NCBI RefSeq assembly: GCF_001194135.2
Contig: NC_068981.1
Coordinates: 159,202,908-159,266,813 of the forward strand
Direction: 5' to 3'
From: Octopus bimaculoides
Lineage: Eukaryota
DNA: 63,906 nucleotides
Both the position numbers and the translations under genes were made by a program. Positions 1,348 to 29,112 of this stretch are shown piece by piece. Position 1 is the first letter of the stretch; each line of letters begins with the position of its first letter. The notes below the pieces were generated by a model. That model was not told the DNA's origin. It was given only the letters and a program-made list of their open reading frames with translations, and ran no database searches.

Positions 1348-1434
1348 CTCTCTTCTTTCACAGACTTTACCAGAAAATGGTGTTTCACACTGGCACTGAT
1401 TTTTTACACACTTCCCACGATCACTGCACAATTG
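1348..1434 (-). CDS. Exon 14: I-EGF4 QLCSDRGKCVKNQCQCETPFSGKVCERRE
   Basis: ttttttttgcAG acceptor, GTTTGT donor, 87 nt, phase 0 to 0. Not in the supplied ORF track. Confidence 0.92.
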
Positions 1435-11075: not shown

Positions 11076-12853
11076 AATAATGGTGATGATGATGACGACG
11101 ACGACGACGACAATGACGACAACGTTAATAACGATGATGGTGACGATCGCAATGACGATGATGACAATGACAATGATGACGACAATGATGAGAATGATGA
11201 TGACATCAATGAAGACAGCAATGATGATGACAACAACAATGATGGTGGTGATGATGATATATTTATTTTCATAGAAGCTATAAATATAAATCTAACAATG
11301 TAAATGTGATATATGCCAAAGAATATAACTTACGGTTTTATACAGTTTTTCTCATCAATGTTCTGAGATTTATGACATTCACAGTTCTTTCCTTGTGTTT
11401 GCTTTGAACATTCACATTGTCCACATACCATTTTACCATTGCCATTACAATGAAAGTCACTGTTAATCTGAAAATGTGAGGTGTAGAAACACACATTGTT
11501 AAGAAAGTTCATGTAGATGAGTATTTGTTGTTGATGTTGTCAAGCTCCAGATCAGTCATGATTAAGCAGATCTGTGATCAATGCTATTCTAGTTGTGACC
11601 AGCCAACCGTTTTCCTTGTATAGAATACCTTAAACCATATTTTTTTCTTAATCCTTTACCTGTTCAGTGTATTGCATATGATACACAGGATATTTTTCCT
11701 TTGCTGTCCAGACATCATATATGATACAGATTCCCAGTTATCTTTTCAGCCACTACATTAACTTAGAACTTAAAAGGAAAGCTTTATATTACTCAAAACA
11801 TATAAAACTGGGGCTAACTTAAAGTATGAAAACAAGCATACACATTTAGGACAAACTCACAAAGAACGTTTTGGACAGGCAAAGAGAGAAAACTTAGTCA
11901 GAAGACAAAATGCTATCTTAAGTCATTGACACACTGGACACTTGCCTGGGGGCTCCAGTGGTCCCATGAGTCTAGCAACCCCATGCTGACCTGTGTAGGT
12001 TATGTATTCCTGTTTATAAATAAATACTATAGACTTCAGTGCATTGCCTTACCTGATGGCTAATAATACTGTTAAGTTGACCCTTCTAATACCTAGGATC
12101 CATTTTCTTGTGATAGGGCCTTGGGACATGTGAGGAAAAGGAGAAACTGATGATTTAGTATGAGTGTGCTTCCAAGAGAGTGACTCTACTACCAAAGTCA
12201 ATCAAGGGTCATTGTTGGGGTTAAACTGGCCAATTGATTATGTCTACAACCCAAGAGCTAGTACATTTCAACCACTCGCTGTCCTCATAGCTCCTTCTTT
12301 TCAATTTCCCTTAGAAGGCTTGGTTGATCCAAGGCTACAATAGAAGGTACCACGAAGAGGGATTGAACCCAGAATTACATGATTTAGAAGCAGATTTCAT
12401 AACAACATGGCCATGCCTTAGACATTTATCCAATATGCTCATCCTTTCTGTGAGAATAAGATTAATTCAAAAAAGATTTGGCTGCTATCTTTAGTAGATT
12501 AAGTGACTGAACAGAAGCTCTTTTGATGGCTTATGTGAGTATGTTTACTGTGTGTATAGCTCTTTATGTCTGAATGTTGACATTTGTCAGTAATCATGAT
12601 TAATGACAAGTGAAAATACTGAGCATGCTCTATACAGGATATGAACTCCTGTTTCCTTGTCAATCATTTACTACTGCATTTTTGGTAATGGTAATTGCCA
12701 AACATAGGTTTTATAATGATTAGTGAGTTGATGTGTGTGTGTGAGACTATGTACGTGTGTGTGTGTGTGTGTGAATGTGTGTGTGTTTATGTGTGTGTGT
12801 GTGTGAATGTGTGTGTATGTGTGTGATTATGTACGTGGGTGTGTGTGTGTTTA

Positions 12854-13351: not shown

Positions 13352-15662
13352 CATTATTCCACAGCCTGGAATCGAACTCGGAATCTTGGGGTTAGTAGCC
13401 CATGTTCTTAATCACTACACCATATGCCTGTGGGCATATTGTTGTGTTAACAACAAACAAGATGAGGACAAATATCCGTCAAATGTAAATAATGTAAATA
13501 ATGTGTTGTTATTGTATTTCATATTTAAGTATTCTTATATTTTGCATTGAAGTAATTCATCATCATTATTTAACATCTGTTTTCCATGCTGGCATGTGTT
13601 GGACAGTTTGACAGGAGATAGGAAGGCTGGGAGCTGTACCAGGCTCCAACTGTCTGTTTTGTCATGAGTTCTACAGTTGGATGCCCTTCCTAATGCTAAT
13701 CATTTAACAGAGTGCAATGTGTACTTTTTATGTGGCACCAGCACAAGTGCTTGTCACGCGGAATCAGCACCAGTGCTTTTTTACATGGCACCTGCACTGA
13801 CAGAGTCACCAAATACTTTGCAAGAAAAAAAAAGAAAAGGTGAAGACCCCTCAACTGAGTGTCGGAAGAAATATTGTGCCAATTGAGAGATTAAAGGTAG
13901 AGAGGGAAAGATATACGTGACTTACTATAGATATATGGATTACCCAGGGGTGTGAGTTAAAGAGCAAGGTAAGATAAGGGGAGTGATAGTGAGAGAGATA
14001 TGGTGAAGATGTCAGGATATGCTCTCAAGGGATTTTGGGAGTGGTGAGAATAGGTGCTGTGACACACAGGTTTGGATTGGTTGAACAGGTGGGACAGTAG
14101 CAAATGATGGAGAGAAACCTAAGAGAGGCTCAGGGGCAGGGCTGCAGTAGATACGTGAGGGCATTGTGGGTGATAGTATATAAGCATGGTATTACTGATG
14201 GAGAACAGCGCAGGCAAGGGTGGAGAAGGAAGAAGGCACAGAAAGGAGGTGATTGGTGAAGACAATAGGCAGGGGAAGATAATGGGAAATGGAAATGGTT
14301 TGGGGCAGGGAAAAGTGGTTAATGAGAAATCTGGGGGAAGTGCTATGTGCCTATTATGCTCTTGGGTGATAGAGAAGTTATGTGTGTTAGGGTATGAAAT
14401 GTGTGTGTGTGGGGAGGTTGACAGGACAGAGCTCCTCATGGACAAGCACTTCCAAGGTGGTTTTAACATTACCAAGACGATTCATGTATTTCCTAGTTAG
14501 ATAACTCCTATATCTGATACTCTTTACTCTTTCACTTGTTTCAGTCATTTGACTGCGGCCATGCTGGAGCACCACCTTTAGTTGACCAAATCGACCCCAG
14601 GAGTTATACTTTGTAAGCCTAGTACTTATTCTATCAGTCTCTTTTGCCAAACCGCTAAGTTACGGGGATGTAAACACACCAGCATCGGTTGTCAAGCGAT
14701 GTTGGGGGGACAAACACAGACACACAAACACACACACACATATATATATACATATATATATATATACGACAAGCTTCTTTCAGTTTCTGTCTACCAAATC
14801 CGCTCACAAGACTTTGGTCGGCCCGAAGCTATAGTCGAAGACACTTGCCCAAGGTGTCACGCAGTGGGACTGAACCCGGAACCATGTGGTTGGTAAGCAA
14901 GCTACTTTATTTCATTAAATTGACCATTAAGGCCTTACAAAGAGGGGACAAACAAGGACAGACAAACGTAAAGTAGCTGCGGGCTGGACACGGACATTAA
15001 TGAGATGAGGATGATAACAAAAGGTGAATAAAAATGAGAGAGGCACCGACGCCCACCGATCGATAACCCCTACTTACCACACAGCCACTCCTGCGCTTGA
15101 TACTTGAATAATTTATATATTTCATACTTGATCATCTCATACATATTTCAAACCTGATTAATTCATATATTTCACACTTAATCATTTCATATATTTCATA
15201 ATGCATATATTTCATACTTGGGAAAAGCATATATTTCATACTTGGTTAAAAAATATTTTCCTTACTAGATTGATCTATCACTTTATTTGTAATAAAATGA
15301 AAACAGTTATATTTGGCATTCTAACCATATAAAAAAAAATTTAATTTTTCCTTCTCTGGTTTTTGTAAATTTATTACTTTATTTTGTGTGTGTTTTCTTT
15401 GCATTTGTTATTGTCTGACTGGGTATGATTCATTATGAACATTCCTGTAATCAAATGATAAAAGAAGTGCATGCTGTGAACTCAAGCAAAACTAAACACA
15501 AGTTATTTCTTGCAATTATTTCAATTAAGTAACTGTCTTACTTAGTTTTTGAATTTTCTGGTTGATTGCATACTCATTGTGAACTTAAAAGACAAGTCAC
15601 TTAAAGTGTGTTCTAAAAAAAGGAAGTGTTTCATGAACTCTAAAATTAGTTGAAATAATGCA

Positions 15663-15721
<59 letters not shown>

Positions 15722-16458
15722 GAGTTTAAAAATGGAATTTGTGCTTACATATTCCTTTCAAAAAAGAAAGCACAGCAATGTACCTTTTCATAGATAGGTA
15801 TGTTTCGTTGTTGTTTAGTCCCTACTCAGCCCTAATCAAGCAGGCCTATGATCAAAAGCTTTCCAGCTATATGAATATCCATACTATTTTTTGAAAGCAT
15901 AGTGTATTTAAGACTACATTATCCAATGTGTCATTTCGTTTCTAAGATAAGGTGTGATATGAGGGAAATTTGGATGAATAGAGGTTCTCTCAGTGCAAAG
16001 TACATTGAGTATAAGTAAAAGATAGCAAAGGTATTGAAATAAATGTGAAATTCTTTCAATACTTAACCGTTGGTTTTTTTAATTCACAATCACAGCTGCA
16101 CTTGGTTTTGACATAAATAATCATTTGGGGTTTCCTTATGCCTTTAACATTGACTTTGATCCTAGAAAGAGTAAAATATATAACTTAACAATTATAATTA
16201 AAATAAGTAAATAACAACAATATCTTAAAATTTATGTCAGTAATTGTTACTCTTTTACTTGCTTCAGTCATTTGACTGTGGCCATGCTGGAGCACCGCCT
16301 TTTAGTTGAGCAAATCGACCCCAGGACTTATTCTTTGGAAGCCTAGTACTTATTCTATTGATCTCTTTTGCCGAACCACTAAGTTACGGGGACATAAACA
16401 CACCACCATCAGTTGTCAAGCGATGTTGGGGGGACAAACACAGACACAAACATATACA

Positions 16459-16518
<60 letters not shown>

Positions 16519-19092
16519 CCGGATATATNNNNNNNNNNNNNNNNNNNNNNNNNNNNNNNNNNNNNNNNNNNNNNNNNNNNNNNNNNNNNNNNNNNNNNNN
16601 NNNNNNNNNNNNNNNNNNNNNNNNNNNNNNNNNNNNNNNNNNNNNNNNNNNNNNNNNNNNNNNNNNNNNNNNNNNNNNNNNNNNNNNNNNNNNNNNNNNN
16701 NNNNNNNNTATATATATATATACATATATATATATACATATATACGACGGGCTTCTTTCAGTTTCCATCTACCAAATCCACTCACAAGGCTTTGGTCGGC
16801 CCGAGACTATAGTAGAAGACACTTGCCCAAGGTGCCGCGCAGTGGGAATGAATCCAGAACCATGTGGTTGGTAAGCAAGTTACTTACCACACAGCCAAAA
16901 AAATAATTTTAACCTATTTACAACTGTTTTTAAAGTAAGCAGAAGGGAAATAACTGAGAAATCCTGATATTTCAAGACGTTTCTAGAATATAATGCCTTT
17001 CTGTTAGTAATCACCAACCTACAGCATTGAAAGGGCTTCTATTTTTTTTTTATGGACAAACCAACACATTACTGTAACTAATGCTTCAGTTTGACTTCAT
17101 TGATTTTACTTTATAGTTTAATCATAGCATGATCTTTTTGCAGAGCTTCTGAGCTTGGTCAGAGAAAAGAGGAAGATTTTGATGTCCTAAGACAGGAGAC
17201 AAGGTCTGAATGCTTGCAGCAAGAAGGTGGTTTCTGTTAAAGATATCTAAATGTCAGATGAAGTTAAATCGTTCAACAGATTGAGTCTACCACTCTAAAA
17301 CAGATACAATCCATCCTGCAAGTTTCCATTTATGATAGAAGACACTTGTCCAGAGTGGCTATGCTGTAGGATTGAACTGTTTGACGAAGTGAGTAGTAAA
17401 GAGAAGACAATGACTGAAGCAGACGTTAACTCGAGAAAGAAATACATAATAACGATATTATTAAAGACCTGGAGAAATTTTACAAACTTACATTTTTTTC
17501 TTGGGAAAACACATTTCTGTGCTGATTACAAAAGAGAATGTTACCTGAAATGATAGAAATTATGAATATCAGTAATTCTTCAACCATTGACTCTTATGTT
17601 AATAAAGCTGAGAAATGATCCTGCTCTTTGGCAACCATTTTTATCTTTATCTTCTTTCAATAATACATCTTCATCAACTATGTTGCATTTGTTCTCAAAA
17701 TCTTAACCAGAAATTCCTTTACTAACCCCTGTTCTGGTTACTATTACTAGTTCCTCTAGTTTTATTTCTTTACTGTTAATACCATTAGAATAATCAAATA
17801 CATTTGTGTATTGCTTTGGCAATACATAAGGAGAACAATCTCTATTAACCAACAGATGCATATATCAGTGGCATTTCGGACAACTGCTTATGATGTGGGT
17901 GATATCTTCAGTGTGAACTCCACAAAGTCTGCATTGGTTGTCACGTTTTACAGCTTTATCTCTTTTGTGCATCAGGTACTTGGTTGATATTTCCTGTTTC
18001 TTGATTGCAAATGCATACTCTTGAAAGTGGGAGTTGATAATCCAGCTATTCATCCATGATAAACTGCTTTGATGATTGATGTTACTATCATCACGGAGCT
18101 TTCTAGTAACATATCCATGCATAGTCTTCTGCTCATGTAAGCTCATCCTTTCATCTGATGATATGTTGCAGTAGAGCTGTGTGACTTCTATGGGCATGTA
18201 TTCTAGGTTATCAGACAAAGAGTGTTGCTCAAGGAGCTGTGTTCCCAAGTCTCATGATGTTATCAGTTTCATGTATGCAAACTTGTTCAAGGGATGCACT
18301 TCGACACTTGGTGGTTAAAAGATGCTGCTGAAGGGATATGATGCGACATTCAGAGGCATGTATGTATGTATGTATGTATGTATGTATGTATGTATGTATG
18401 TACATGTATGTATTTGTATATATTAATATCTATATTTACAAAGACAGATCAGTGGCTTAGTAGAATTGGAATGTTGAACAAAAAAACCTTTTACATGTCA
18501 CCTACTTCTTGTAAAAGTTTGCCTATTCCTGTTCTAAACTAGTTCAAGAGTCTAATCCAGCTTTATCAATTTATACCGTTTTATTGATAGATTCACTAGA
18601 AGAACTTTTTAAAAACTGCAAAGGATTTCACTTACTGCTTGCCCATTATGGATACCATAACAAGAGGATGTTTCAATCTGTGTTTTATATCTGGAAAAAG
18701 AGAAAAATTCCATTTATAATATATGTATTAGTTTTGTACTATATTTGCATTCTATATTTGCAGTTGATTCTCCATACAACTGTAGGCAGGAAATGTTTGG
18801 AAAATTTTGGGTTTTATTGCAGAAATTGTTTTTGTAACATAAATGAAAAAGTACAACTTGTTCGTTAGACAGACAAACTGAGATTAGCAAGATATATGTT
18901 TTGCAATCCATTGGTTATAAGTTGTAAAGCCTATACTTATGATAGTCAGTAATCTAAAGTTTTAATTTCAAAATCATTACGCTTTATATTCATAATCTTA
19001 AATTAGATAAAACTTACTACCTCTTTTTTTAGATAACTACCTAGACATGCACAGACACGCATGCACACACACACATGCACACACACACACAT

Positions 19093-19162
<70 letters not shown>

Positions 19163-19302
19163 GAAATAGCTTTCTTACCAACCACATGGTTCTGGGTTCA
19201 GTCCCACAGCGTGGCACCTTGGGCAAGTGTCTTCTATTATAGCCTTGGGCCAACCAAAGCCTTGTGAATGGATTTGATAGACAGAAACTGAAAGAAGCCC
19301 AT

Positions 19303-19348
<46 letters not shown>

Positions 19349-19732
19349 AATGGATGAATGAATTATCCTTTGTTTACAGTTAACACGGAAAATTCAATAA
19401 ACAGTTACCAGGGTAGAAAGTAAAAGAAACTGAATAGCATCTGTGCTCAACTCCATTTATTTACTTATATATATATGTATGTATATATTTGTGTGTCTGT
19501 GTTTGTCCCCGCCAACATCACTTGACAACTGATGCTGGTGTGTTTACATCCCTGTAACTTAGCAGTTCTGCAAAAAGGACCGATAGAATAAGTACTAGGC
19601 TTACAAAGAATAAGTCCTAGGTCGATTTGCTCAACTAAAAGTGGTGTTCCAGCATGGCCACAGTCAAATGACTAAAACAAATAGAAGAATAAAAGCGTAT
19701 ATATTTACTTGCATATTTTATGTGCTTACTCC

Positions 19733-19771
<39 letters not shown>

Positions 19772-20421
19772 NNNNNNNNNNNNNNNNNNNNNNNNNNNNN
19801 NNNNNNNNNNNNNNNNNNNNNNNNNNNNNNNNNNNNNNNNNNNNNNNNNNNNNNNNNNNNNNNNNNNNNNNNNNNNNNNNNNNNNNNNNNNNNNNNNNNN
19901 NNNNNNNNNNNNNNNNNNNNNNNNNNNNNNNNNNNNNNNNNNNNNNNNNNNNNNNNNNNNNNNNNNNNNNNNNNNNNNNNNNNNNNNNNNNNNNNNNNNN
20001 NNNNNNNNNNNNNNNNNNNNNNNNNNNNNNNNNNNNNNNNNNNNNNNNNNNNNNNNNNNNNNNNNNNNNNNNNNNNNNNNNNNNNNNNNNNNNNNNNNNN
20101 NNNNNNNNNNNNNNNNNNNNNNNNNNNNNNNNNNNNNNNNNNNNNNNNNNNNNNNNNNNNNNACAATAAGTACCAAATGAATTTATATGAAATACTTATT
20201 TTATAAAGATAGAAAAATTATAAAAAATATAAAAATATTAAAATAATAAACATTCCATAATCATCCATTCATCCATTATAATATATGCTAACATGTATAT
20301 TATATACAAAAACCAGCTTACATATTATCGTTTTAAATACAATTTGAACAAAGTTTAAGGTTATGTGATAGTGGATTTTCGTCGATGAGTTCTTGAAACT
20401 TGGTTATTTTCCCTAAAACTA

Positions 20422-20460
<39 letters not shown>

Positions 20461-22182
20461 TATATTTTTATTGATGTGTGTGTGTGAAAATTGCAAGGAT
20501 TTCAAATAACAAGAAAAAAAAGAGAACAATAGATTATACTTACTTCTGATTACAATCACTTTTCATTACTACCTTTAAAGGTTTTGGTGCATTAACAGAT
20601 AATTTGATATCCTTTGTAAAAGAATATAAAATGAAGTATTAAATTTTCTACCAAATTTTGGTTGAAATCTTGTTCTATTAGTTACCATAAGAAAAATTCT
20701 AAGTGTTCAAGTTCAACAAAAATTCAAAGATAAATTTAAGTTCAGTTAAACTAATTTGTGAATTTATTTATTTCATAGTAAAATAAAGAGAGGTCAAAAA
20801 CCATGGTCAGTTAAAATGACTCTAACATTTGCCAAAAATTTGTGGCATTGTGCCAATGTTAGAAGAAATCCTTATTTTAACCCTTTAGCATTCAGCTTAC
20901 TCTGTTAAGTGTAATGCTTATTTATTCAAATTGTTTTGAATTATCATACATTATCTTGTAATCTCAAAATTTTGATGATGTGCTTGCTTATTTTTAGAAT
21001 GACATTGTAGGGTAGTTCTGAGAGGTCAGATCTAGCCAGTTTGAACATAAAACAGGTAAAGTATTTAAGCCAGATATGGTCAATTTATTGCATTTTTTTA
21101 AAGAGTTGTCAATTGACAGAACTGTTTGAGTGTCAGACAAAATGCCTAGTGGTATTTTTTGCAGCACTTTACCTTTTGAGTTCTTCCCAAGGTTGATAAC
21201 AATAAAATAGCAGTCAAGTGCTGGGTGCAATTTGATTGACTTGCTCCTCCCCACCTCTAAGTTCTTTCGTTGTGTCTATGTTAGAAACTATCATAAAAAA
21301 GCAGGACTGCTTATTAATGTAGAACTATGTGACAACTGCAATACTCTTAATCAGATGCTTACTGCATTAATGAAAAGACAAACAAAAGTGGTCTTTTATT
21401 GTTGTTGTTTTATTTGATGCTGTTTTGCCTTAGGTCACCATAAGAAGACCTATAATCAAAAGGCATTCCACTGTTTTTCATTTTTGCTTTTTTTTTTTAA
21501 ATTTTAATTTCAGAGACTACCTTGTTCAGCGAATCTTTCTTTATTGAGTAAATAATGTATGATTTGAAAATTATTTTGCTGTTATTTCTAGCAGATAAAG
21601 TAACTGTGCAAAAGCTTCCACATCAGCTTGTAAAAGAGCATATATTCTGATGTATAAGGAGAGGTGATAGATGTGACTGTTTATGAAAGAGTTCTTCATT
21701 AGATAAGAAACTGCCTAGTAGCCCTACTATAGTAATTGATTATCCTCTAGTAAAATTTGATTTATTCTATTACAATTTAATACAGCTCATTCCATATTCA
21801 GGTTGAGTTTAATAGAACTGAATGCTTTGGTCAGAGAACTCAAAGTTAATGGAATTTCAGAACATATCTGATAGGAAAATTATTTATTAGAACTGAGTGT
21901 GCAAGCAAAAGACAAGTTAAGTGTCTTGTGGTTAGCTGCTTCCATTTGTAGCAGATCTTTGGCTCAATTTGAACCTTGGCTGTTTTCTCTGCAAATGGAA
22001 ATTTTTCATAATCAAAAGCAGGATCTTTCAAATTGATTGATGACATCATGAAAAATTTAACCAATGATGCTCAATTGCTGCATATCAAACTTATTGACTG
22101 ATACCAGTAAAATTAGAAATGGGTCAAAAGTTGTTGAGAGCTAATCAGTCAAACTCAAAGTTAAACATATCTAATAAGATAG

Positions 22183-22213
<31 letters not shown>

Positions 22214-25200
22214 GAAATGGAGAGGACAGACAGCTAGAGGAGAGCAGAGGATCAGTGCAATCATGTGTTAAGTCAGACTAAGTTTAACATCACTTGTTCT
22301 ACAACCAGACTTGTCTGCATGAACAAGCAACAAAATGCAACAAACAAACTGTTTTTAATTTGAAATTCAACCATAGCAGGGACACTTATATTCTTACACT
22401 CACCCTTTCTCTGCCTCCTTCTCCTTATAGCTGTCATCTAAACACAGCCACACAAGCTGTCAACTGAATCACTAATATGAGCACAATGTTCTCTACTGGA
22501 TCCTGGCTGCACAGAATTACAGAATTAGAACACAACATTAATCTCATTTTCTGATGTTAGAGAAAAGCTGAACATTAGAAGCATCAGTTGTGGCGTGCAA
22601 GAGAGACGATTGCGCTGGTATGGACATGTGGTGAGAATGGAGGAGGATAGCTGCGTGAAAAAGTGCCACACCCTAACAGTTGAGGGAACCCGTGGAAGAG
22701 GTAGGCCCAGGAAGACCTGGGCTGAGGTGGTGAGGCAAGACCTTCGTACATTGGGCCTCACCGAGGCGATGACTACTGACCGAGACCTTTGGAAATGTGC
22801 TGTGCGTGAGAAGACCCGGCAAGCCAAGTAAGATNNNNNNNNNNGATCGTTGCCAGTGCCCCTGGACTGGCTTGTGCGAGTGGCACATAAAAGACACCAT
22901 TTCGAGCGTGGCCGTTTTCGTGCGGGTGACACGTAAAAGCACCCACTACACTCTCTGAGTGGTTGGCGTTAGGAAGGGCATCCAGCTGTAGAAACTCTGC
23001 CAAATCAGACTGGAGCCTGGTGTTGCCATCCGGTTTCACCAGTCCTCAGTCAAATCGTCCAACCCATGCTAGCATGGAAAGCGGACGTTAAACGATGATG
23101 ATGATGATGATGATTCTGTAAGTTTTTTTTCTTTTTCTTGGAACTGTTGTGTTCCATTTCTAACTTTAAACAATACAACAGATGATGATCTGAAAACAGC
23201 AGACTACTATTATGTTTCTTTGGATACTAATTCAAAGAACTAATTCCAAAGATTATAGGTAGTTACAAGCAACCGCTCTAGTATTGGTGCTATGATAAAA
23301 TGCACCCAATGCACTCTGTAAAGTAACTGGTGTTAGGAAAACCACTTTACATGTAAAAACTATGTCAAAAATGGACTGTACAAGCAAAACATGGTTCCCT
23401 AACTAATCTAGGAGGGCAGGAACTTCAAATAAAAACTGACTAGATCCATGAAAACCTATCCAACCCAGTCCAGCATGAAAAGAAGACACAAAGTAATGAT
23501 GATGATTAGGATACATATGTGTACATGTATAAGTATATATGAGTTTGACTTTGTGTATACTAGTATAAAATAATGTGGTGAGTTATGTTTCTTTACCGTT
23601 TCCTCCACAGCAAAAAGAAAAATATAAAGCTTAATTATTCAATTACTAATGACTGGTAAAATAAATTCTTGAACTGGTATGATCAATTAGAACCCCTTAA
23701 AAGGTGGCACCCCCAGCTTGACCACAGTCAAATTACTAAAACCAATGAAAAAAAAGAAAAGTGAAAATATTTGTTTACTTACACCTCCCAAACGGTTATG
23801 GGCATCTTTTTGTATTAAAAACCCTTTCACAGGCAAAACATAACCAGTATCTGGAAAATATGTAAACTGAACTTGAAAAATATTGTTGTCTTGAATTAAA
23901 GACATGTTACTGATTCCAGATGGATAAAAGACAGAAATAGGATTTGAACTCGGGCATACAACTAGATACTATAAGTATCTATTCTAGTTCTCTACCTCAT
24001 TCTAATTTAATATACCTAAAATAAAGAAAAGAGAAAACTTACTTGGCACAAGTTGTAGAACAATTCTTTGAGGTTTCAAAAGTCTCTTCTTTGTAGCTCT
24101 TCTATTCTGCAGAGTAAACAAAACAAAACTTCCAAGTAAAATGAATTACCATATTTACTCAAGTACATTGTATTCTTGAATATAATGAAATCCTAACATT
24201 TTGATCCTCAAAAGTCAGTAACATATTTAATTCTCTTATCTATTTTTCTTTTACATTTGCATATAATGTTAACCCACAATTTTAGTTATTTCCTTTTAGT
24301 CAAGAGGGAAGGCTGTGCTCAGATCCTGTAGTGGGTCTTTGAAACTCATAGGAAGTAGGGATGAAGGTGTCCTGAAACCAAAGACCTGACCCAAATGCCT
24401 GCAATAGAGTGGATTCTACTAAAAGCATCCAAGGTACCAGTGGGGATATTAAATCATGCAATGGATTAAGTCTGTTACCTATGTAAGCCATCATGAGAAT
24501 TGAACTCAGAACACAATGAGCCAGAACAAATACCACAAGGTATCAAATCTGACATTCTTACAGTTCTGCCAGTCCACCATCCTGGATTGGTACTTTTTGA
24601 TCAAACCTTGAAGGATGAAATGTAAAGTTGACCTTGGTAGGATTTGAACTTAGATCTTAGAGAGTTGGAACAAATACCACAAGGCATTCATTATGATTCA
24701 AGTTCCCAGTTCAAAAGGAATGGATGGTGACAGTCATCAGAATCCATGCAAACAGTGAGACTGGATGATGATGATTCTATCTGAAACTCTAATGACTCTG
24801 CCAGTTTCCACTTAGATGTGTTGTATTAAATTTCCTTTATTATGCTTGAGTAAATAGGGTATTTATGCATATATATATATATATATCATCATCATCATCA
24901 TCATCATCATCGTTTAACGTCCGCTTTCCATGCTAGCATGGGTTGGACGATTTGACTGAGGACTGGTGAAACCGGATGGCAACACCAGGCTCCAGTCTAA
25001 TTTGGCAGAGTTTCTACAGCTGGATGCCCTTCCTAACGCCAACCACTCAGAGAGTGTAGTGGGTGCTTTTACGTGTCACCCGCACGNNNNNNNNNNNNNN
25101 NNNNNNNNNNNNNNNNNNNNNNNNNNNNNNNNNNNNNNNNNNNNNNNNNNNNNNNNNNNNNNNNNNNNNNNNNNNNNNNNNNNNNNNNNNNNNNNNNNNN

Positions 25201-27151
25201 NNNNNNNNNNNNNNNNNNNNNNNNNNNNNNNNNNNNNNNNNNNNNNNNNNNNNNNNNNNNNNNNNNNNNNNNNNNNNNNNNNNNNNNNNNNNNNNNNNNN
25301 NNNNNNNNNNNNNNNNNNNNNNNNNNNNNNNNNNNNNNNNNNNNNNNNNNNNNNNNNNNNNNNNNNNNNNNNNNNNNNNNNNNNNNNNNNNNNNNNNNNN
25401 NNNNNNNNNNNNNNNNNNNNNNNNNNNNNNNNNNNNNNNNNNNNNNNNNNNNNNNNNNNNNNNNNNNNNNNNNNNNNNNNNNNNNNNNNNNNNNNNNNNN
25501 NNNNNNNNNNNNNNNNNNNNNNNNNNNNNNNNNNNNNNNNNNNNNNNNNNNNNNNNNNNNNNNNNNNNNNNNNNNNNNNNNNNNNNNNNNNNNNNNNNNN
25601 NNNNNNNNNNNNNNNNNNNNNNNNNNNNNNNNNNNNNNNNNNNNNNNNNNNNNNNNNNNNNNNNNNNNNNNNNNNNNNNNNNNNNNNNNNNNNNNNNNNN
25701 NNNNNNNNNNNNNNNNNNNNNNNNNNNNNNNNNNNNNNNNNNNNNNNNNNNNNNNNNNNNNNNNNNNNNNNNNNNNNNNNNNNNNNNNNNNNNNNNNNNN
25801 NNNNNNNNNNNNNNNNNNNNNNNNNNNNNNNNNNNNNNNNNNNNNNNNNNNNNNNNNNNNNNNNNNNNNNNNNNNNNNNNNNNNNNNNNNNNNNNNNNNN
25901 NNNNNNNNNNNNNNNNNNNNNNNNNNNNNNNNNNNNNNNNNNNNNNNNNNNNNNNNNNNNNNNNNNNNNNNNNNNNNNNNNNNNNNNNNNNNNNNNNNNN
26001 NNNNNNNNNNNAAGCTTATCAAAAGAAGAGGAACTATGTCTATAAACTTGTCAATTTGTTCTTGGTGATTGATGTAGTTGACATTCAATTTGAACATTTT
26101 TAAGTCAATATCTGCAGAAAAAAAAACATAAGTAGGAAAGAATTTCAGGGAGCTGTCATTCTGGAAAGCAAGGACCAGGAAATGTGCTTTGTGAAGGGCT
26201 TGCAGGATGAGACACAGTAATGGTGACAAGAAGAATAGTGACTGGTGGAGAGAGACAGTCTGGATGGAGAAGGTAAGGATATACAGGGAGCTAGTTCATT
26301 AGAGTAGAGATTTTTGTAGTAGCAACTTTTTTTATGATTTAATCAGATGAGGAAGGGCACCCTTTCTAGGAGCTTTGAGGCTGTTAATTATCCTCAGACT
26401 AGAGGACTTGGCTTAAAGGCTTATGCAAAAATAGGAATGGTTCTTCTGACAGACTTTCACAGTTTCTTCTATTTACCAATTCTACCTACCAGGCCTCAAA
26501 CCAGAGGCTTAGTCTGAATACTTGTAACATAGTGAATTCAACTAAATGCACCCAAGTGGTAGTGTTTAACTAGGCAAAATGTTAGGTTTTACACTTAAAG
26601 TTGCTACTGTTATTAAAGTTTACATATTTGCATAAAAATATTTGGTTGGAAAATTACATTCAGGAATACACATTTATTACCTTTTTCAAATGAGCTTCAT
26701 TCACAGACTGATAGATTGAACTTTCAGAACAGCCTCCTCTCAGTAAAGTTCCTCTGGTTTCACATCTTGAGGCACCATGGAAATCCTTGAATTTGAATAA
26801 TACAATTAATATTTTTTGTTAATGGTAAGTGGATTGAATGACACTTAGAATGGCAAAGTAATAGGTATCTTTTCTTTTATATATCTACATCCCAACTTGG
26901 ATAAGTTATGATACACCATTAGCTTTCTTATGAGTAACGACATCACATTAAAGAACTTTCAATTCCTGGGGTTTCAGAGACTGTTTTTTTGTTTGTTTGT
27001 TTTTTTAAACACATGTCACATGAAAATTATTTAACCCATGTTATTATGGAAAATTAGAGGTAAAAATATTTAACACTGAAGAAAAACAGATAAGCAAAAA
27101 AATTGTCTAAATTTGTACAATGTAATATACATGATCTGTACATATACATGT

Positions 27152-27249
<98 letters not shown>

Positions 27250-29112
27250 AATTTTAAAAGAATTCAATATAATTTTTCTAATGTTGAAGTATTGCATAAA
27301 AACACACAATAACTTACAGGAGAGAGGCACCAGCTGCATGTCCCATTGCGTTGTATGCAACTCCCACATGTTTTCTCATGAATGCAATCATTACCAGCAA
27401 CTGAAGACAAAAAAGACATTGCAAAGATCTGGATTGTTTAATTGCCTATTTATATAATCATTTTGTAATATAGAAATCTCACTTTATATGTACTTGATTC
27501 TAATAATTATTTTGTCAACTATGGAGGAATAACATTTAGAGAGATGATCTCACTGGGATTTGAACTCAGTATCTAGAAATACATAGCTACACATTACACT
27601 GTATTAAGTTTGGTGTTCTAACTATCTCAGCATCCTTGGTTACTGTATAATTGGCAGGTGTTGAGCCAATAAGGAAATCTCAACTTTTTAGAAATTGCGG
27701 TAGTCAAATCTCTCTCAAATTACACAATACTGTCTTTAAAAGGAAAGGAAGTGTTGGACAATGTCTTCTTGGATATACAAAAAAGACATGATGATTATTG
27801 CTGAAAAATAATTGATTCTAATTCTAGGTTTGCTTGATCAAAGATTACTTGATATTAAACAACAGCGAGAACTTGGTTTGGTGTAGACTTAATCTGTTAC
27901 ACATTTAACATCACTAATTAGCTGTTGGACTTCTCTTTAGAGGAGTCCTTTCTATTGCAAGCATACAAGCCTAGTCTCCAGTCTGAGAATAGCTTCCTCA
28001 TTCCTCTCAGAAATCTTGGATGCTGCCCTCCCTTTTCTTTGATTAACACAAAAGCAAAGACAAAAAAAAAAAAAAACTTTTTTTTATCTGTAAATTTGTG
28101 AAGCTGAATTTAATGCTTCAATATTTTTGTGTGTGAGAGTGAAATAATTGAGCTTTTGTGGTTTGAGCTATGGCATTCATGCCTTTCTCAAGGAAGTGGA
28201 GTAAGTGAGGAGGTCATAACAACATTGTTATATTTCAGGATAATCATTTTATCTTTTTTTGCCAAATAACCACAGGCACATCAGGAATCTTGCAAAATAA
28301 ATGTATAAAATATCATAACAACAGTCATAACCAAAAGCTGAATCAGGTCATTACTATTTAGACTTACAACTCATCTTTTTAGATTCCATACATTTAACTG
28401 ATTACATCTATTATAGTGTATGACTTGTGCTTGTTTTATCAGTATCAACCTAGAAGGGATGATGTTCAAATTCAACTCCAGCAATCTTGAACGCAGTGTT
28501 GATAGACAAACTAAATAGTATAAAGCATTTAGTTCGGTGTGCTTCTGTTTCTGTCACTCCATCATTTTATATTAGATAAATTATTGATTTCTAACAATAG
28601 CTCATGGACGGAAACCATAAAAGCAGGTGTCACCAATTAGCTTAAATTCAGTATGTTATTGATATTTATTTTATTGACCCCAAAATGGACAAAACACCAT
28701 GCCAATCTTAGTAAGACTTGAACTCGGAATGTAAACAGACATAATTAATCCTTTAGCATTTAAACTGGCCATATCTGGTCTCAGTATACTACTTGCCGTA
28801 TGTTCAAACTGGCCAGATCTGGCTTTTCACACTTACCCTACAATGGCTTTCTAAAAATAAGCAATCACATCATTGAAATCTTGAGGCTACAAGTTAATGG
28901 TATTTAATTCAAAACCATGTGAATAAATTAGCATGACATTTGACAAAGTAATCTGAATGATAAGGAGTTAAATATTACAAAGCATTTTGGTAATTGTTCT
29001 GATAATTTATATCAACCAGCAATCCTCATTAGATTGAATATTAAAGGTAAAACTTACCATTGTATGCAAAAAGACATATCAACAAAAGACAAAAGTTTAT
29101 TTGGCTTGACAT
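1348..29112 (-). CDS. Integrin beta-like gene lacking the betaI domain (14 coding exons in the window, 3' end outside the window)
   Basis: Hand-spliced exons total 1128 nt (376 aa), with no stops and matching phases at all 13 junctions: MSSQINFCLLLICLFAYNVAGNDCIHEKTCGSCIQRNGTCSWCLSPDFHGASRCETRGTLLRGGCSESSIYQSVNEAHLKKNRRATKKRLLKPQRIVLQLVPNTGYVLPVKGFLIQKDAHNRLGGDIKLSVNAPKPLKVVMKSDCNQKYKTQIETSSCYGIHNGQAVTFSFVISTEMCFPKKKMIKVNVKGIRKPQMIIYVKTKCSCDCELKKPTINSDFHCNGNGKMVCGQCECSKQTQGKNCECHKSQNIDEKNCIKPGDQFVCSGQGKCHCGSCECSPDVMKTNRYSGRFCECDKLGCRKYNNSLCGGPTHGKCICGKCACKNQYTGEACEIDVRTKNCLSSSGQLCSDRGKCVKNQCQCETPFSGKVCERRE. The Cys spacing matches integrin beta PSI, hybrid and I-EGF domains. Confidence 0.92.
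2385..2720 (-). mobile_element. Degraded RTE-like LINE ORF C-terminal fragment
   Basis: LLTVERLQLWYYEHVIKR resembles the RTE RxLxWYGHVxR motif. Stops and frameshifts are present. Confidence 0.5.
3398..3507 (-). CDS. Exon 13: I-EGF3 and start of I-EGF4 PTHGKCICGKCACKNQYTGEACEIDVRTKNCLSSSG
   Basis: ttattctttcAG acceptor, GTAAGT donor, phase 1 to 0. Confidence 0.95.
3865..4239 (+). mobile_element. Helentron/HINE (DINE-1/pearl-like) non-autonomous element (a related 3' end lies on the minus strand at ~39500-39720)
   Basis: Starts taacaagag. The subterminal repeat acctccgcc recurs in the 3' stem-loop acctctgcc...ggtggaggt, with an (ACAA)n microsatellite before it. Confidence 0.65.
4745..4852. 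repeat. Degenerate (CATCATA)n-like short tandem repeat
   Basis: Seen directly. Confidence 0.85.
5250..5580 (-). mobile_element. Penelope-like element, GIY-YIG C-terminal remnant
   Basis: Frameshifted translation resembles the end of a PLE ORF (LAKLL.../...KQSSTLSTSH). Confidence 0.4.
5600..6510 (+). mobile_element. Penelope-like element fragment: Ser/Asn-rich stretch, GIY-YIG endonuclease and 3' terminal repeat
   Basis: WRYIGCSGNSFKQHLSNHRSSFRVPERRYVTLLVSHVWQLMNDGIPYLIL*KIL, then frameshifted RCKLCIAEHVRIL...LNSRTKISQTCLHFRRFLL. The 3' part is related to 46830-47350. Confidence 0.75.
6711..7200 (+). mobile_element. Second, left-truncated copy of the same mariner-derived element
   Basis: Same internal sequence and the same gaaaactttgcataggcctctg junction as the 9393 copy. 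Confidence 0.85.
7403..7484 (-). CDS. Exon 12: I-EGF2/3 MKTNRYSGRFCECDKLGCRKYNNSLCG(G)
   Basis: tttgtgttgtAG acceptor, GTGAGT donor, phase 0 to 1, YxGxFCECD motif. Not in the supplied ORF track. Confidence 0.94.
9123..9192 (-). CDS. Exon 11: I-EGF2 GDQFVCSGQGKCHCGSCECSPDV
   Basis: ttttttttccAG acceptor, GTAAAT donor, phase 2 to 0. Confidence 0.93.
9393..10236 (+). mobile_element. Mariner-derived non-autonomous element with ~240 bp inverted arms
   Basis: TA-flanked caaggtctgatc...gatcagaccatg. Internal remnant ITEDLGMRHVSAKFVPKLLSADQK (mariner WVPREL-type linker). The right arm encodes, antisense, the transposase start MTEKVEQRICIKF. Confidence 0.88.
11020..11260. repeat. (GAT/GAC/AAT)n compound trinucleotide microsatellite
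   Basis: Seen directly. It produces the poly-D, poly-M and poly-S ORF artefacts. Confidence 0.95.
11334..11467 (-). CDS. Exon 10: I-EGF1 and start of I-EGF2 INSDFHCNGNGKMVCGQCECSKQTQGKNCECHKSQNIDEKNCIK(P)
   Basis: cacattttcAG acceptor, GTAAGT donor, phase 0 to 2. Confidence 0.95.
12730..12908. repeat. (TG)n-rich microsatellite. One of many (CA)n, (TA)n, (AG)n and (GATA)n tracts (e.g. 4365, 10540, 19060, 27150, 40595, 41055-41480, 43150, 47950, 61680-62043)
   Basis: Seen directly. Most large N gaps are bordered by such tracts. Confidence 0.95.
13141..13503 (-). mobile_element. tRNA-headed non-autonomous retroelement with a Penelope-type hammerhead motif and an inverted terminal segment
   Basis: On the minus strand: A box TGGTGTAGTGA (~13422-13412), B box GAGTTCGATTCC (13379-13368), (TAA)n, then GACAC-CTGATGA-A-GGCCG-gagggtatat-CAGCT-GAAA-CATT-GTGTT. 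The segments ~13163-13225 and ~13442-13503 are inverted repeats. Confidence 0.7.
13220..13265 (-). ncRNA. Type I hammerhead ribozyme-like motif (minimal, Penelope-type, partly decayed)
   Basis: Stem I GACAC/GUGUU, core CUGAUGA and GAAA, stem II GGCCG/CAGCU with one mismatch, and a tiny stem III ACAU that is one transition away from the palindrome ACGU. Confidence 0.65.
13560..13790 (-). mobile_element. Older, diverged RTE-like 3' UTR copy (similar remnants near 23280-23510, 30400-30640 and 7890-7930)
   Basis: Shares ggatgcccttcctaa and ccatgctggcatg motifs plus an ATC/GAT tail with the young copies. Confidence 0.6.
14523..15096 (-). mobile_element. tRNA-derived SINE, family A, with internal (CA)n/(TA)n, interrupted by a 162-bp insert (other copies 16250-16897 -, 19160-19690 +, 34055-34342 -, 37655-38040 -, 42068-42232 +, 54735-55150 +)
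   Basis: The head gtggctgtgtggtaag...gggttcagtccca has A/B-box-like motifs, followed by a ccttgggcaagtg CORE-like segment. Many similar copies occur in the window. Confidence 0.85.
16068..16161 (-). CDS. Exon 9: hybrid end and CxCxC IKVNVKGIRKPQMIIYVKTKCSCDCELKKPT
   Basis: ttactctttctAG acceptor, GTTAAG donor, phase 2 to 0, CSCDC hallmark. Confidence 0.92.
17492..17544 (-). CDS. Exon 8: hybrid domain VTFSFVISTEMCFPKKK(M)
   Basis: tttctatcatttcAG acceptor, GTAAGT donor, phase 0 to 2, VxFxxxIxxxxC motif. Confidence 0.88.
17865..18340 (-). mobile_element. Degraded non-LTR retrotransposon fragment (R4/NeSL-like CCHC region)
   Basis: EYAFAIKKQEISTKYLMHKRDK...DNQCRLCGVHTEDITHIISSCPK, a CxxC...HxxxxC zinc knuckle downstream of RT. 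Confidence 0.65.
18636..18690 (-). CDS. Exon 7: hybrid domain YKTQIETSSCYGIHNGQA
   Basis: tttctctttttccAG acceptor, GTAAGT donor, phase 2 to 0, CxxIxxG motif. Confidence 0.88.
20544..20611 (-). CDS. Exon 6: hybrid domain DIKLSVNAPKPLKVVMKSDCNQ(K)
   Basis: ttcttttacaaAG acceptor, GTAAGT donor, phase 0 to 2. Resembles the post-betaI hybrid strands ending in SxC. Confidence 0.85.
22585..23114 (+). mobile_element. Young RTE-clade LINE 3' end (5'-truncated) with (GAT)n tail
   Basis: Translates QERRLRWYGHVVRMEEDSCVKKCHTLTVEGTRGRGRPRKTWAEVVRQDL (RTE ORF C-terminus), followed by a 3' UTR and a GAT tail. CpGs are retained. Confidence 0.85.
23783..23850 (-). CDS. Exon 5: TGYVLPVKGFLIQKDAHNRLGG (spans the position where betaI is normally inserted)
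   Basis: atattttccAG acceptor, GTAAGT donor, phase 1 to 0, open frame. DAHNRLGG resembles the DAYNSLSS/DAYGKIRS end of the betaI alpha7 helix. Confidence 0.82.
24043..24106 (-). CDS. Exon 4: start of hybrid domain NRRATKKRLLKPQRIVLQLVP(N)
   Basis: tttactctgcAG acceptor, GTAAGT donor, phase 0 to 1. Resembles the conserved QxxPQxxxLxLRxG strand. Confidence 0.88.
24885..25086 (-). mobile_element. Second copy of the same RTE 3' end, inverted, running into the gap
   Basis: The reverse complement matches 22919-23100 with one visible mismatch (aaatcag versus aaattag). Confidence 0.9.
26681..26785 (-). CDS. Exon 3: PSI C-half DFHGASRCETRGTLLRGGCSESSIYQSVNEAHLKK
   Basis: AG acceptor, GTAATA donor, 105 nt, phase 0 to 0. 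The RC...L...GC...I pattern is typical of integrin beta PSI. Confidence 0.9.
27318..27400 (-). CDS. Exon 2: PSI domain N-half (V)AGNDCIHEKTCGSCIQRNGTCSWCLSP
   Basis: tttgtcttcAG acceptor, GTAAGT donor, phase 1 to 0, CxxC...CxWC PSI pattern. Confidence 0.93.
29058..29112 (-). CDS. Integrin beta-like coding exon 1: start codon and signal peptide MSSQINFCLLLICLFAYN
   Basis: ATG at 29112-29110, hydrophobic stretch, GTAAGT donor, phase 1. Possible acceptors lie upstream at 29141 and 29388, so 5' UTR exon(s) probably exist. Confidence 0.8.

What the first reader, a model, noticed from the sequence alone, without database searches (positions are those of the whole stretch)
16068..29112. Integrin beta subunit with the entire betaI (ligand-binding) domain cleanly missing
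Seen: exons 1-9 splice in frame into signal peptide, a 7-Cys PSI, a complete hybrid domain and CxCxC, and four I-EGFs follow. There is no DxSxS MIDAS or YPVDLYYLMD-like segment. Established: in canonical beta integrins the ~240-aa betaI domain is inserted between the first and second hybrid segments (beta1 ...FTLKFKRAED[betaI]DAYNSLSSEVIL...), and it supplies ligand binding and most of the alpha-subunit interface. Here the text reads LPVKGFLIQK-DAHNRLGG-DIKLSV, so the entry strand is fused inside one exon to what looks like the tail of helix alpha7. The 3.2 kb intron 5 has no betaI-like exon. Its only gap is 10 N inside one continuous RTE element, and two other 10-N gaps in this window are overlap joins. 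Inference: this is an intact, headless beta-like protein that cannot bind RGD through MIDAS and probably cannot heterodimerise normally. It could be a decoy, a modulator or a new adhesion/immune molecule. It differs from vertebrate ITGBL1, which is EGF repeats only without PSI or hybrid. I cannot tell from here whether it has already been described.
Basis: partly seen in the sequence, partly recalled or inferred. Interest (0 to 1): 0.92.

Follow-up and report, generated by a model that had tools for sequence, protein, structure and literature searches.

The report
Secreted headless integrin-beta-like octopus gene
The window holds the first 14 exons of a real, conserved Octopus bimaculoides gene for a secreted integrin-beta-like protein that has the PSI, hybrid and EGF "stalk" parts but no ligand-binding betaI domain; it is already in sequence databases under misleading automatic names and has relatives in other molluscs, but I found no paper that describes it.

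Summary
On the minus strand, RefSeq protein XP_014791255.1 (O. bimaculoides) maps exactly onto 14 GT-AG exons. They encode a signal peptide, a 7-Cys PSI domain, both halves of the hybrid domain and I-EGF1-4. About 246 residues, the whole betaI/VWA domain, are missing. The junction (GFLIQK|DAHNRLGG) lies inside exon 5, which contains no N.

The assembly gaps do not matter. The gap-free O. vulgaris locus has identical exon sizes and a contiguous 2.0-kb intron 5. The window's gaps fall in repeat insertions or microsatellites. Neither locus contains any betaI-like sequence.

The gene is not a pseudogene: dN/dS is 0.30, and the reading frame is intact over 37 exons in O. vulgaris; O. sinensis has a predicted protein of the same length (976 aa).

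The full protein has 976 aa: five I-EGF2-4 cassettes, a beta-tail domain, and no transmembrane or cytoplasmic part. It is therefore a secreted stand-alone integrin stalk, like ITGBL1 but keeping PSI and hybrid.

The same betaI-less layout occurs in abalone, mussels (with an mRNA contig), a chiton and a clam. It appears to have arisen separately in teleosts (tree-supported) and is also predicted in arthropods and nematodes, whose origin is unresolved.

The function, soluble modulation of integrins or matrix, is inferred and not shown.

The parts
29058..29112 (-). Exon 1: start codon and signal peptide (MSSQINFCLLLICLFAYN)
   Evidence: Exact mapping of P0156. It is the only hydrophobic 19-mer in the full-length orthologue.
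27318..27400 (-). Exon 2: PSI domain, first five cysteines
   Evidence: PSI_integrin E 2e-10.
26681..26785 (-). Exon 3: PSI domain, cysteines 6-7, and linker
24043..24106 (-). Exon 4 (64 nt): first hybrid strand, KPQRIVLQLVP (compare PQKIHLRIRP of the canonical O. vulgaris beta)
   Evidence: Same size and phase as exon 4 of the abalone homologue. The boundary is shared with the canonical octopus beta gene.
23783..23850 (-). Exon 5 (68 nt): second hybrid strand joined directly to an 8-residue linker (GFLIQK|DAHNRLGG), at the place where betaI sits in canonical subunits
   Evidence: No N in the exon. Identical peptide in O. vulgaris and O. sinensis.
20544..20611 (-). Exon 6 (68 nt): start of the C-terminal hybrid half, with the first hybrid Cys
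   Evidence: Same size in abalone.
18636..18690 (-). Exon 7: hybrid domain
17492..17544 (-). Exon 8: hybrid domain
16068..16161 (-). Exon 9: last hybrid strands and CxCxC (KTKCSCDCE)
   Evidence: The Sepia orthologue of this exon is at L001 1747-1852.
11334..11467 (-). Exon 10: I-EGF1 and the start of I-EGF2
9123..9192 (-). Exon 11: I-EGF2
   Evidence: EGF_integrin E 3e-10.
7403..7484 (-). Exon 12: I-EGF2/3
3398..3507 (-). Exon 13: I-EGF3/4
1348..1434 (-). Exon 14: I-EGF4. The donor gtttgt is conserved in O. vulgaris. The gene continues beyond the left end of the window; the RefSeq 379-aa model instead reads through to a TAA at 1336-1338.
21933..23105 (.). Repeat or retroelement insertion in intron 5 containing the 10-N gap (22835-22844). 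It is absent from O. vulgaris, where the segment is 85 bases.
24887..26017 (.). The 925-N gap plus an inverted 196-base copy of the same repeat, in intron 3. The equivalent in O. vulgaris is 356 bases and holds no exon.
19772..20162 (.). The 391-N gap in intron 6, beside a (TA)n run. There is no equivalent sequence in O. vulgaris.
16529..16708 (.). The 180-N gap in intron 8, inside a dispersed-repeat copy whose two halves abut in other copies.

Best explanation
This is the 5' 40% (exons 1-14 of 37) of a functional Octopus bimaculoides gene. It encodes a secreted paralogue of integrin beta subunits that lacks the betaI domain.

Domain order, as shown by the full-length O. vulgaris and O. sinensis proteins: signal peptide, PSI, a hybrid domain whose two halves are joined by a short loop where betaI would be inserted, I-EGF1, five tandem I-EGF2-4 cassettes, then a beta-tail domain. 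There is no transmembrane helix and no cytoplasmic tail.

Origin (inferred from exon structure). An old in-frame loss removed the betaI coding block. That block runs from mid exon 5 to the end of exon 11 in the canonical octopus beta gene. The loss happened before cephalopods and gastropods split, because the abalone gene shares the exon sizes and phases around the junction.

How it works (inferred, not shown). With no MIDAS and no betaI it cannot bind ligands the integrin way or pair head-to-head with an alpha-subunit propeller. It most likely acts outside the cell as a free-standing integrin 'leg', binding matrix, integrin legs or other partners. This would resemble vertebrate ITGBL1, which is reported to be a secreted inhibitor of integrin activation.
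For: - Exact exon map.
- The two-block alignment to beta3 skips about 246 residues.
- Engineered beta2 PSI/hybrid/I-EGF fragments (5e6w_A, 2p26_A) align in one stretch.
- No PF00362 hit and no DxSxS motif.
- No betaI-like sequence in the window or in the 99-kb O. vulgaris locus: best tblastn E 0.039, HMM E 3.7.
- The gap-free O. vulgaris locus is colinear with identical exon sizes.
- dN/dS is 0.30 (bootstrap 0.15-0.60) and dS 0.074 over 376 codons. Exons are 96.8% identical against roughly 91-92% for introns.
- The full-length orthologues have 976 aa and 132 Cys, and their only hydrophobic segment is the signal peptide. Canonical octopus betas have a strong TM.
- Integrin_B_tail is found at the C-terminus, E 2.4e-12.
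- AF2 with a 51-sequence alignment gives mean pLDDT 84.6, about 90 over PSI and hybrid.
- Foldseek matches the beta2 PSI/hybrid/I-EGF1 fragment 5e6v_A with TM 0.79 and rmsd 3.4 A.
- Homologues with the same layout occur in Haliotis, Solemya, Liolophura and Mytilus.
- A Mytilus RNA-size contig of 1,948 bases carries the whole 613-aa ORF without introns.
- Haliotis exons of 64/41/68/52/53/97 nt compare with Octopus 64/68/68/55/53/94 nt.
- Canonical gene boundaries match.
- ITGBL1 is described as a secreted integrin inhibitor in PMC8921176.
Against: - I found no transcript or protein evidence for the Octopus gene itself. The Octopus records are predictions, and no Logan RNA contig clusters with them.
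- dN/dS for PSI plus hybrid alone (0.38, bootstrap 0.13-1.24) is not significantly below 1, because the two species differ at only 17 sites there.
- The function is entirely by analogy. Orthology to vertebrate ITGBL1 is not established: the repeat unit is three EGFs here and two in frog ITGBL1.
- The mollusc clade in my neighbour-joining tree has under 50% bootstrap support.
Confidence: 0.85

Rival explanations
1. Assembly artefact: betaI exons exist but are hidden in the N gaps that bracket the exon 4-5 contig, or that contig is misplaced.
For: The contig 22845-25086 that carries exons 4-5 is bounded by gaps on both sides. It carries 99.5% identical inverted repeat copies near both ends. The 10-N gap shows no overlap join.
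Against: The junction lies inside exon 5, before the intron. The O. vulgaris locus has no N, the same exons and a contiguous 2.0-kb intron 5. O. sinensis has the same 976-aa protein. No betaI-like sequence is present in either locus.
Confidence: 0.02
2. Decaying pseudogene: a duplicated integrin beta gene that lost betaI by deletion and is no longer under selection.
For: No expression evidence was found for Octopus. The Sepia pharaonis copy shows a 1-nt frame shift in exon 9. RefSeq split the O. bimaculoides gene.
Against: The ORF is open across all 37 exons, with canonical splice sites, in O. vulgaris. The O. bimaculoides exons in the window are intact, and O. sinensis has a predicted protein of the same 976-aa length. 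dN/dS is 0.30. The cysteines aligned to PSI, hybrid and I-EGF positions are kept. The same layout is kept in distant molluscs and is expressed in Mytilus. The Sepia frame shift is in an A-run and could be an assembly error.
Confidence: 0.05
3. Exon-skipping isoform of a canonical integrin beta gene, not a separate gene.
For: Some database relatives are labelled 'isoform X2/X3' of integrin beta-1-like genes, for example Sardina and Liolophura.
Against: In Octopus there are no betaI exons in the locus to skip. The junction is within one exon. The canonical octopus beta genes are separate loci; one lies 22.6 Mb away on the same chromosome.
Confidence: 0.02
4. Membrane-bound headless beta subunit that still pairs with an alpha subunit through the leg domains and signals through a cytoplasmic tail.
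For: The window alone does not show the 3' end. In canonical integrins the I-EGF and beta-tail domains lie next to the alpha-subunit leg domains (established knowledge).
Against: The full-length orthologues end right after the beta-tail domain, with no hydrophobic segment and no Integrin_b_cyt domain.
Confidence: 0.04

Closest known systems
[quoted passage not shown]
   Same: It is a secreted stand-alone integrin-beta stalk built of tandem integrin-type EGF repeats, with no betaI, no TM and no cytoplasmic tail. RefSeq names the 3' half of this very gene 'integrin beta-like protein 1'. ITGBL1 is reported as a secreted inhibitor of integrin activation (PMC8921176).
   Different: The octopus protein keeps a PSI domain, a complete hybrid domain, I-EGF1 and a beta-tail domain. 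It repeats a three-EGF cassette (exons of 38/70/82/110/87 nt) five times, whereas frog ITGBL1 (P0011) repeats a two-EGF unit. Orthology is not shown.
Canonical integrin beta subunits (human beta3/beta2/beta1; O. vulgaris CAI9716091.1)
   Same: PSI, hybrid, I-EGF1-4 and beta-tail occur in the same order with the same cysteine pattern. The best PDB matches have E 1e-37. The exon 4/5 boundary is shared, and the start of exon 6 approximately matches the canonical exon 11/12 boundary, given an ambiguous alignment.
   Different: The whole betaI/VWA domain with MIDAS (about 235-246 aa; six and a half exons in the octopus canonical gene) is absent. The TM and cytoplasmic domains are absent too, and the I-EGF2-4 block is multiplied.
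Engineered beta2 PSI/hybrid/I-EGF fragments with the I-like domain removed (PDB 1yuk, 2p26, 2p28, 5e6v, 5e6w)
   Same: The domain content at the N-terminus is the same. These are the only PDB chains that align with the octopus protein in a single stretch: query 28-332 to chain 9-313 of 5e6w_A. The AF2 model superposes on 5e6v_A with TM 0.79 and rmsd 3.4 A. They show that a hybrid domain folds without betaI. That the I-like domain was deleted in these constructs is from my own knowledge.
   Different: Those are laboratory constructs of a human receptor. This is a natural, selected gene with a long EGF array.
Predicted betaI-less 'integrin beta-like' proteins of other animals (Haliotis rubra XP_046562643.1, Mytilus spp., Liolophura, Solemya; teleost 'integrin beta-1-like'; Tachypleus, Leguminivora, Trichinella)
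   Same: They have a signal peptide or PSI, a hybrid domain with only 27-39 residues where canonical betas have 263-273, then EGFs and mostly a beta-tail, with no betaI hit. The molluscan ones share exon sizes with Octopus.
   Different: They have fewer EGF cassettes. The teleost ones nest within vertebrate beta1 (100% bootstrap) and so arose separately. None appears to have been studied.

Membership tests
Integrin beta subunit (canonical) | N-terminal PSI domain with seven cysteines | tested here: met
   Pfam PSI_integrin E 2e-10, 40.7 bits against a cut-off of 27. Aligns to beta3 37-95.
Integrin beta subunit (canonical) | Hybrid domain (two sequence segments forming one beta-sandwich) | tested here: met
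   Query 114-210 aligns to the C-terminal hybrid segment of beta3. The N-terminal strands carry the PQxxxLxL motif. The AF2 model has pLDDT about 90 there and matches 5e6v_A with TM 0.79.
Integrin beta subunit (canonical) | betaI (VWA) domain with DxSxS MIDAS inserted in the hybrid domain | tested here: not met
   No PF00362 hit and no D.S.S motif. About 246 residues are skipped in the beta3 alignment. No betaI-like coding sequence is present in the window or in the O. vulgaris locus.
Integrin beta subunit (canonical) | Four I-EGF domains and a beta-tail domain | tested here: met
   I-EGF1-4 align to beta3 up to residue 626. Integrin_B_tail scores E 2.4e-12 in the O. vulgaris orthologue, which lies outside the window.
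Integrin beta subunit (canonical) | Single transmembrane helix and cytoplasmic tail (Integrin_b_cyt) | tested here: not met
   The full-length orthologues have no hydrophobic 19-mer apart from the signal peptide and no PF08725 hit. The canonical octopus beta has both.
ITGBL1 / TIED | Secreted: signal peptide, no membrane anchor | tested here: met
   Hydropathy of P0007/P0155. This is a prediction only; secretion was not shown.
ITGBL1 / TIED | Body made of tandem integrin-type EGF repeats | tested here: met
   EGF_integrin matched in five stretches, 186.6 bits, in P0007. Five exon cassettes.
ITGBL1 / TIED | EGF repeats only (no PSI, hybrid or beta-tail) | tested here: not met
   PSI, hybrid and beta-tail are all present.
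ITGBL1 / TIED | Orthology to vertebrate ITGBL1 (tree, synteny) | tested here: inconclusive
   Frog ITGBL1 (P0011) ranks above single-copy integrins in the HMMER scan, but repeats inflate its score. The repeat unit differs. Synteny was not examined.
Molluscan betaI-less integrin-beta-like proteins (unnamed group) | PSI-hybrid-EGF colinear in one stretch, with a short linker in place of betaI | tested here: met
   One-stretch phmmer alignments to the Haliotis, Solemya, Liolophura and Mytilus proteins. Linker lengths are 27-39 residues against 263-273 in canonical betas.
Molluscan betaI-less integrin-beta-like proteins (unnamed group) | Shared exon structure around the junction | tested here: met
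   Exon 4 is 64 nt in both, exon 6 is 68 nt in both and exon 8 is 53 nt in both, with the same phases, in Octopus and Haliotis rubra.

The most novel reading that the evidence does not exclude
Secreted, betaI-less integrin-beta paralogues that keep PSI and hybrid form an old, selected class. They predate the cephalopod-gastropod split, and similar proteins have arisen again in teleosts and possibly also in arthropods and nematodes. They would act as soluble regulators that engage integrin legs or matrix through the hybrid/PSI/EGF surface. Vertebrate ITGBL1 may be a further-trimmed relative of the same idea. That would make the hybrid/PSI unit a functional module in its own right, not just a lever for betaI.
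Probability: 0.3. Interest if true: 0.6.

Novelty: new variant of a known kind. Interest (0 to 1): 0.42.

Why it matters
Integrin beta subunits are defined by the betaI domain. The PSI and hybrid domains are usually seen only as the lever that transmits betaI conformational change.

A natural, conserved, secreted protein that keeps PSI and hybrid but drops betaI suggests that this unit has a job of its own. The same layout appears to have arisen separately in teleosts and is also predicted in arthropods and nematodes, which adds to the case.

It also gives a natural counterpart of the engineered beta2 fragments used in structural work. It offers a possible intermediate form for thinking about how stand-alone stalk proteins such as ITGBL1 arose.

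On the practical side, it corrects database annotation. The O. bimaculoides gene is split in two, and the orthologues are called 'integrin beta-2-like', 'tenascin-X' and 'integrin beta pat-3'.

It is not a new kind of molecule, and its function remains untested.

Tried and rejected
- **Wrong first gene model.** My first hand-built model started exon 5 too early (NMSLIQDNNIFQVQFTYFPD...). It needed either a 23-nt micro-exon, an alternative exon-3 donor, or an exon hidden in the 925-N gap. The orthologues showed the true exon 4 (24106-24043) and an internal acceptor for exon 5. Searches used that earlier model. The parts they support are unaffected.
- **Word-indexed protein searches.** Searches with the N-terminus and with the whole model did not return the Octopus proteins, although they are over 94% identical. 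I do not know why. The third search, with a profile, was set too strict and gave three hits.
- I ran it with the Sepia protein instead, and that found the family.
- **Single-sequence AF2.** It was uninformative, pLDDT 36.8.
- **Pfam on translated introns.** I replaced it with a local tblastn and HMM search using 30 betaI domains.
- **Retroelement identity.** Continuity of the retroelement across the 10-N gap could not be shown from other copies in the window.
- **Literature.** Searches for a description of betaI-less beta-like proteins, or of ITGBL1 with PSI/hybrid, found nothing relevant. The library omits most subscription journals, so this is weak evidence of absence.
- **Sepia N-terminus.** It could not be examined because its contig ends 1.7 kb upstream of exon 9.

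Full report
**What is there**

The window is Octopus bimaculoides (assembly GCA_001194135.2, chromosome CM046601.1). The RefSeq protein XP_014791255.1 ('integrin beta-2-like', 379 aa, P0156) maps without a mismatch onto 14 minus-strand exons, all with AG/GT borders:

| Exon | Coordinates |
|---|---|
| 1 | 29112-29058 |
| 2 | 27400-27318 |
| 3 | 26785-26681 |
| 4 | 24106-24043 |
| 5 | 23850-23783 |
| 6 | 20611-20544 |
| 7 | 18690-18636 |
| 8 | 17544-17492 |
| 9 | 16161-16068 |
| 10 | 11467-11334 |
| 11 | 9192-9123 |
| 12 | 7484-7403 |
| 13 | 3507-3398 |
| 14 | 1434-1348 |

My own first model had the start of exon 5 wrong and left exon 4 unresolved. The orthologues corrected it. Searches used that earlier model. 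The regions they are cited for (PSI, residues from the junction onward, EGFs) are identical in both models.

**Is betaI really missing?**

Yes.

- The N-terminal 215 residues hit Pfam PSI_integrin (E 2e-10, above the curated cut-off).
- Against the PDB, the protein aligns to integrin beta3 in two blocks: query 28-85 to chain 37-95, and query 114-372 to chain 370-626 (E 1e-37). About 246 chain residues, the betaI domain, have no counterpart.
- The PDB chains that align in one unbroken stretch are the beta2 PSI/hybrid/I-EGF fragments (5e6w_A, query 28-332 to chain 9-313; 2p26_A).
- Pfam Integrin_beta (VWA) is absent from the octopus protein. It scores 223 bits in a canonical O. vulgaris beta subunit.
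- There is no D.S.S motif.
- In a 51-sequence alignment, betaI-less proteins have 27-39 residues between the second hybrid strand and the first hybrid cysteine. Canonical subunits have 263-273.

**The gaps**

No gap lies in an exon, and the junction GFLIQK|DAHNRLGG is inside exon 5.

The O. vulgaris orthologue (CAI9716324.1, P0007) sits in a 99,206-base stretch with no N at all. Its exons 1-14 have exactly the same sizes (55, 83, 105, 64, 68, 68, 55, 53, 94, 134, 70, 82, 110, 87 nt). Its intron 5 is 2.0 kb and contiguous.

Colinear blastn blocks relate each window gap to the O. vulgaris sequence:

| Window gap | What it corresponds to in O. vulgaris |
|---|---|
| 10 N (22835-22844) | Lies in a 1.17-kb segment (23105-21933) that is only 85 bases there |
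| 925 N plus adjacent repeat copy | 356 bases |
| 391 N | About 0 bases, next to a TA run |
| 180 N | Inside a dispersed-repeat copy, in a stretch of equal length (671 vs 658 bases) |

Thirty betaI domains used as tblastn queries, and an HMM built from them, find nothing in the window or in the O. vulgaris locus (best E 0.039 and 3.7). Hidden betaI exons are therefore excluded.

The 10-N gap at 22835 is not an overlap join, although those at 36077 and 38700 are. And I could not show that the retroelement is continuous across it.

In O. vulgaris and O. sinensis (XP_029637747.1, named 'tenascin-X') the gene gives one 976-aa protein from 37 exons. After exon 14 come four more copies of a five-exon cassette (38/70/82/110/87 nt, an I-EGF2-4-like unit), then a beta-tail domain (Integrin_B_tail E 2.4e-12), then the stop codon.

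The only hydrophobic segment is the signal peptide. Canonical octopus betas show a strong TM helix and a cytoplasmic domain.

The O. bimaculoides annotation splits the gene in two. The 379-aa model ends 'VCT*' by reading through the conserved exon-14 donor. The remainder is XP_014791256.1, 'integrin beta-like protein 1'.

**Functional or decaying?**

- Between O. bimaculoides and O. vulgaris, the 376 shared codons give dS 0.074, dN 0.0225 and dN/dS 0.30 (bootstrap 0.15-0.60).
- The PSI and hybrid part alone gives 0.38, with a wide interval (0.13-1.24) because there are only 17 differences.
- Exons are 96.8% identical, against roughly 91-92% for the colinear introns.
- The cysteines aligned to PSI, hybrid and EGF positions are kept.
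- AlphaFold2 with the alignment gives mean pLDDT 84.6, about 90 across PSI and hybrid. Residues 114-124 (QKDAHNRLGG...) form a loop with pLDDT about 78.
- Foldseek places the model on integrin beta structures. The beta2 PSI/hybrid/I-EGF1 fragment 5e6v_A gives TM 0.79 and rmsd 3.4 A.

**Relatives**

A HMMER scan of 1.84 billion representatives, seeded with the Sepia pharaonis relative, recovered the family. Proteins that align to the octopus N-terminus in one stretch and have no betaI hit include:

- Molluscs: Haliotis rubra XP_046562643.1 ('integrin beta-like protein 1'), five Mytilus species, the chiton Liolophura, the clam Solemya.
- Teleosts: 'integrin beta-1-like' proteins of Misgurnus, Sardina and Sebastes.
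- Others: a horseshoe crab, a moth, and Trichinella and Romanomermis nematodes.

A Mytilus Logan contig of 1,948 bases carries the complete 613-aa ORF without introns. It is therefore an mRNA-derived contig.

In a neighbour-joining tree the molluscan proteins group together, but with under 50% support. The teleost ones nest inside vertebrate beta1 with 100% support, so betaI has been lost more than once.

**How the loss happened (inference)**

The abalone gene has exons of 64, 41, 68, 52, 53 and 97 nt where Octopus has 64, 68, 68, 55, 53 and 94 nt, with the same phases. In abalone an intron sits exactly at the junction, and the eight-residue DAHNRLGG piece is absent.

A canonical O. vulgaris beta gene shares the exon 4/5 boundary (after LxLxP, phase 1). 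It also has a phase-0 boundary at or within a few codons of the start of exon 6; the alignment there is ambiguous by about four residues. It encodes betaI from mid exon 5 to the end of exon 11.

The first 44 nt of octopus exon 5 correspond to the first 44 nt of canonical exon 5. The simplest reading is one old in-frame loss of that block, before cephalopods and gastropods diverged. Whether DAHNRLGG is a relic of helix alpha7 or just a linker cannot be decided.

**What it does (inference)**

Without MIDAS and the betaI surface, it cannot bind ligand or the alpha-subunit propeller as integrins do. [quoted passage not shown]

Membership in ITGBL1 is not established. This protein has PSI, hybrid and beta-tail domains, and its repeat unit has three EGFs rather than two.

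**Known or new?**

The sequences are in public databases under inconsistent automatic names. Five full-text searches found no paper describing a natural betaI-less protein with PSI and hybrid domains. I rate it a new variant of a known kind and of moderate interest.

Noticed in passing
window 22919-23114 and 24891-25086: Two 99.5% identical inverted copies of a dispersed repeat bracket exons 4-5, each beside an assembly gap. The same repeat has many copies in the O. vulgaris locus, but not at these two sites.
   Followed up: partly
window 36077-36086, 38700-38709, 44556-44565: The 10-N gaps at 36077 and 38700 are overlap joins: 44 and 52 bases are duplicated across the gap. The one at 44556, like the one at 22835, shows no overlap.
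   Followed up: yes
window 1336-1347 (just downstream of exon 14): RefSeq XP_014791255.1 ends 'VCT*' by reading through the conserved gtttgt donor. The rest of the gene is annotated as a separate protein, XP_014791256.1 ('integrin beta-like protein 1'). In O. vulgaris and O. sinensis it is one gene.
   Followed up: yes
L001 1747-1852 and 4335-4412 (Sepia pharaonis CAHIKZ030000881.1): The cuttlefish orthologue has a 1-nt frame shift in an A-run of exon 9, and its annotated N-terminus is translated out of frame through I-EGF1. The contig ends 1.7 kb upstream, so its PSI and hybrid exons are not visible. This may be an assembly error or a real lesion.
   Followed up: partly
L002 32614-92668 (O. 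vulgaris OX597814.1): A five-exon cassette of 38/70/82/110/87 nt (an I-EGF2-4-like unit) is repeated five times in tandem. Frog ITGBL1 repeats a two-EGF unit instead.
   Followed up: partly
proteins P0030, P0055, P0190, P0184, P0079, P0148, P0135 (not in the window): BetaI-less PSI-hybrid-EGF proteins are also predicted in teleosts (nested inside beta1), a horseshoe crab, a moth and clade-I nematodes. The teleost case points to a separate loss of betaI; the origin of the others is unresolved. Some may be annotation isoforms, and I did not check their loci.
   Followed up: partly
L007 (O. vulgaris OX597814.1, 143.75 Mb): A canonical integrin beta gene lies on the same chromosome, 22.6 Mb from the betaI-less gene. 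Its exon 4/5 boundary matches that of the betaI-less gene, and its exon 11/12 boundary lies at or within a few codons of the exon 5/6 boundary.
   Followed up: yes
window 14518-14907, 16244-16897, 19164-19705 and elsewhere: There are many copies of a roughly 390-base SINE-like repeat, often with (CA)n or (TA)n runs. Most assembly gaps in the window sit at such repeats or microsatellites.
   Followed up: no
window 30000-63906: A scan for cysteine-rich reading frames found no further integrin-like exon on either strand. The region was otherwise not analysed.
   Followed up: no
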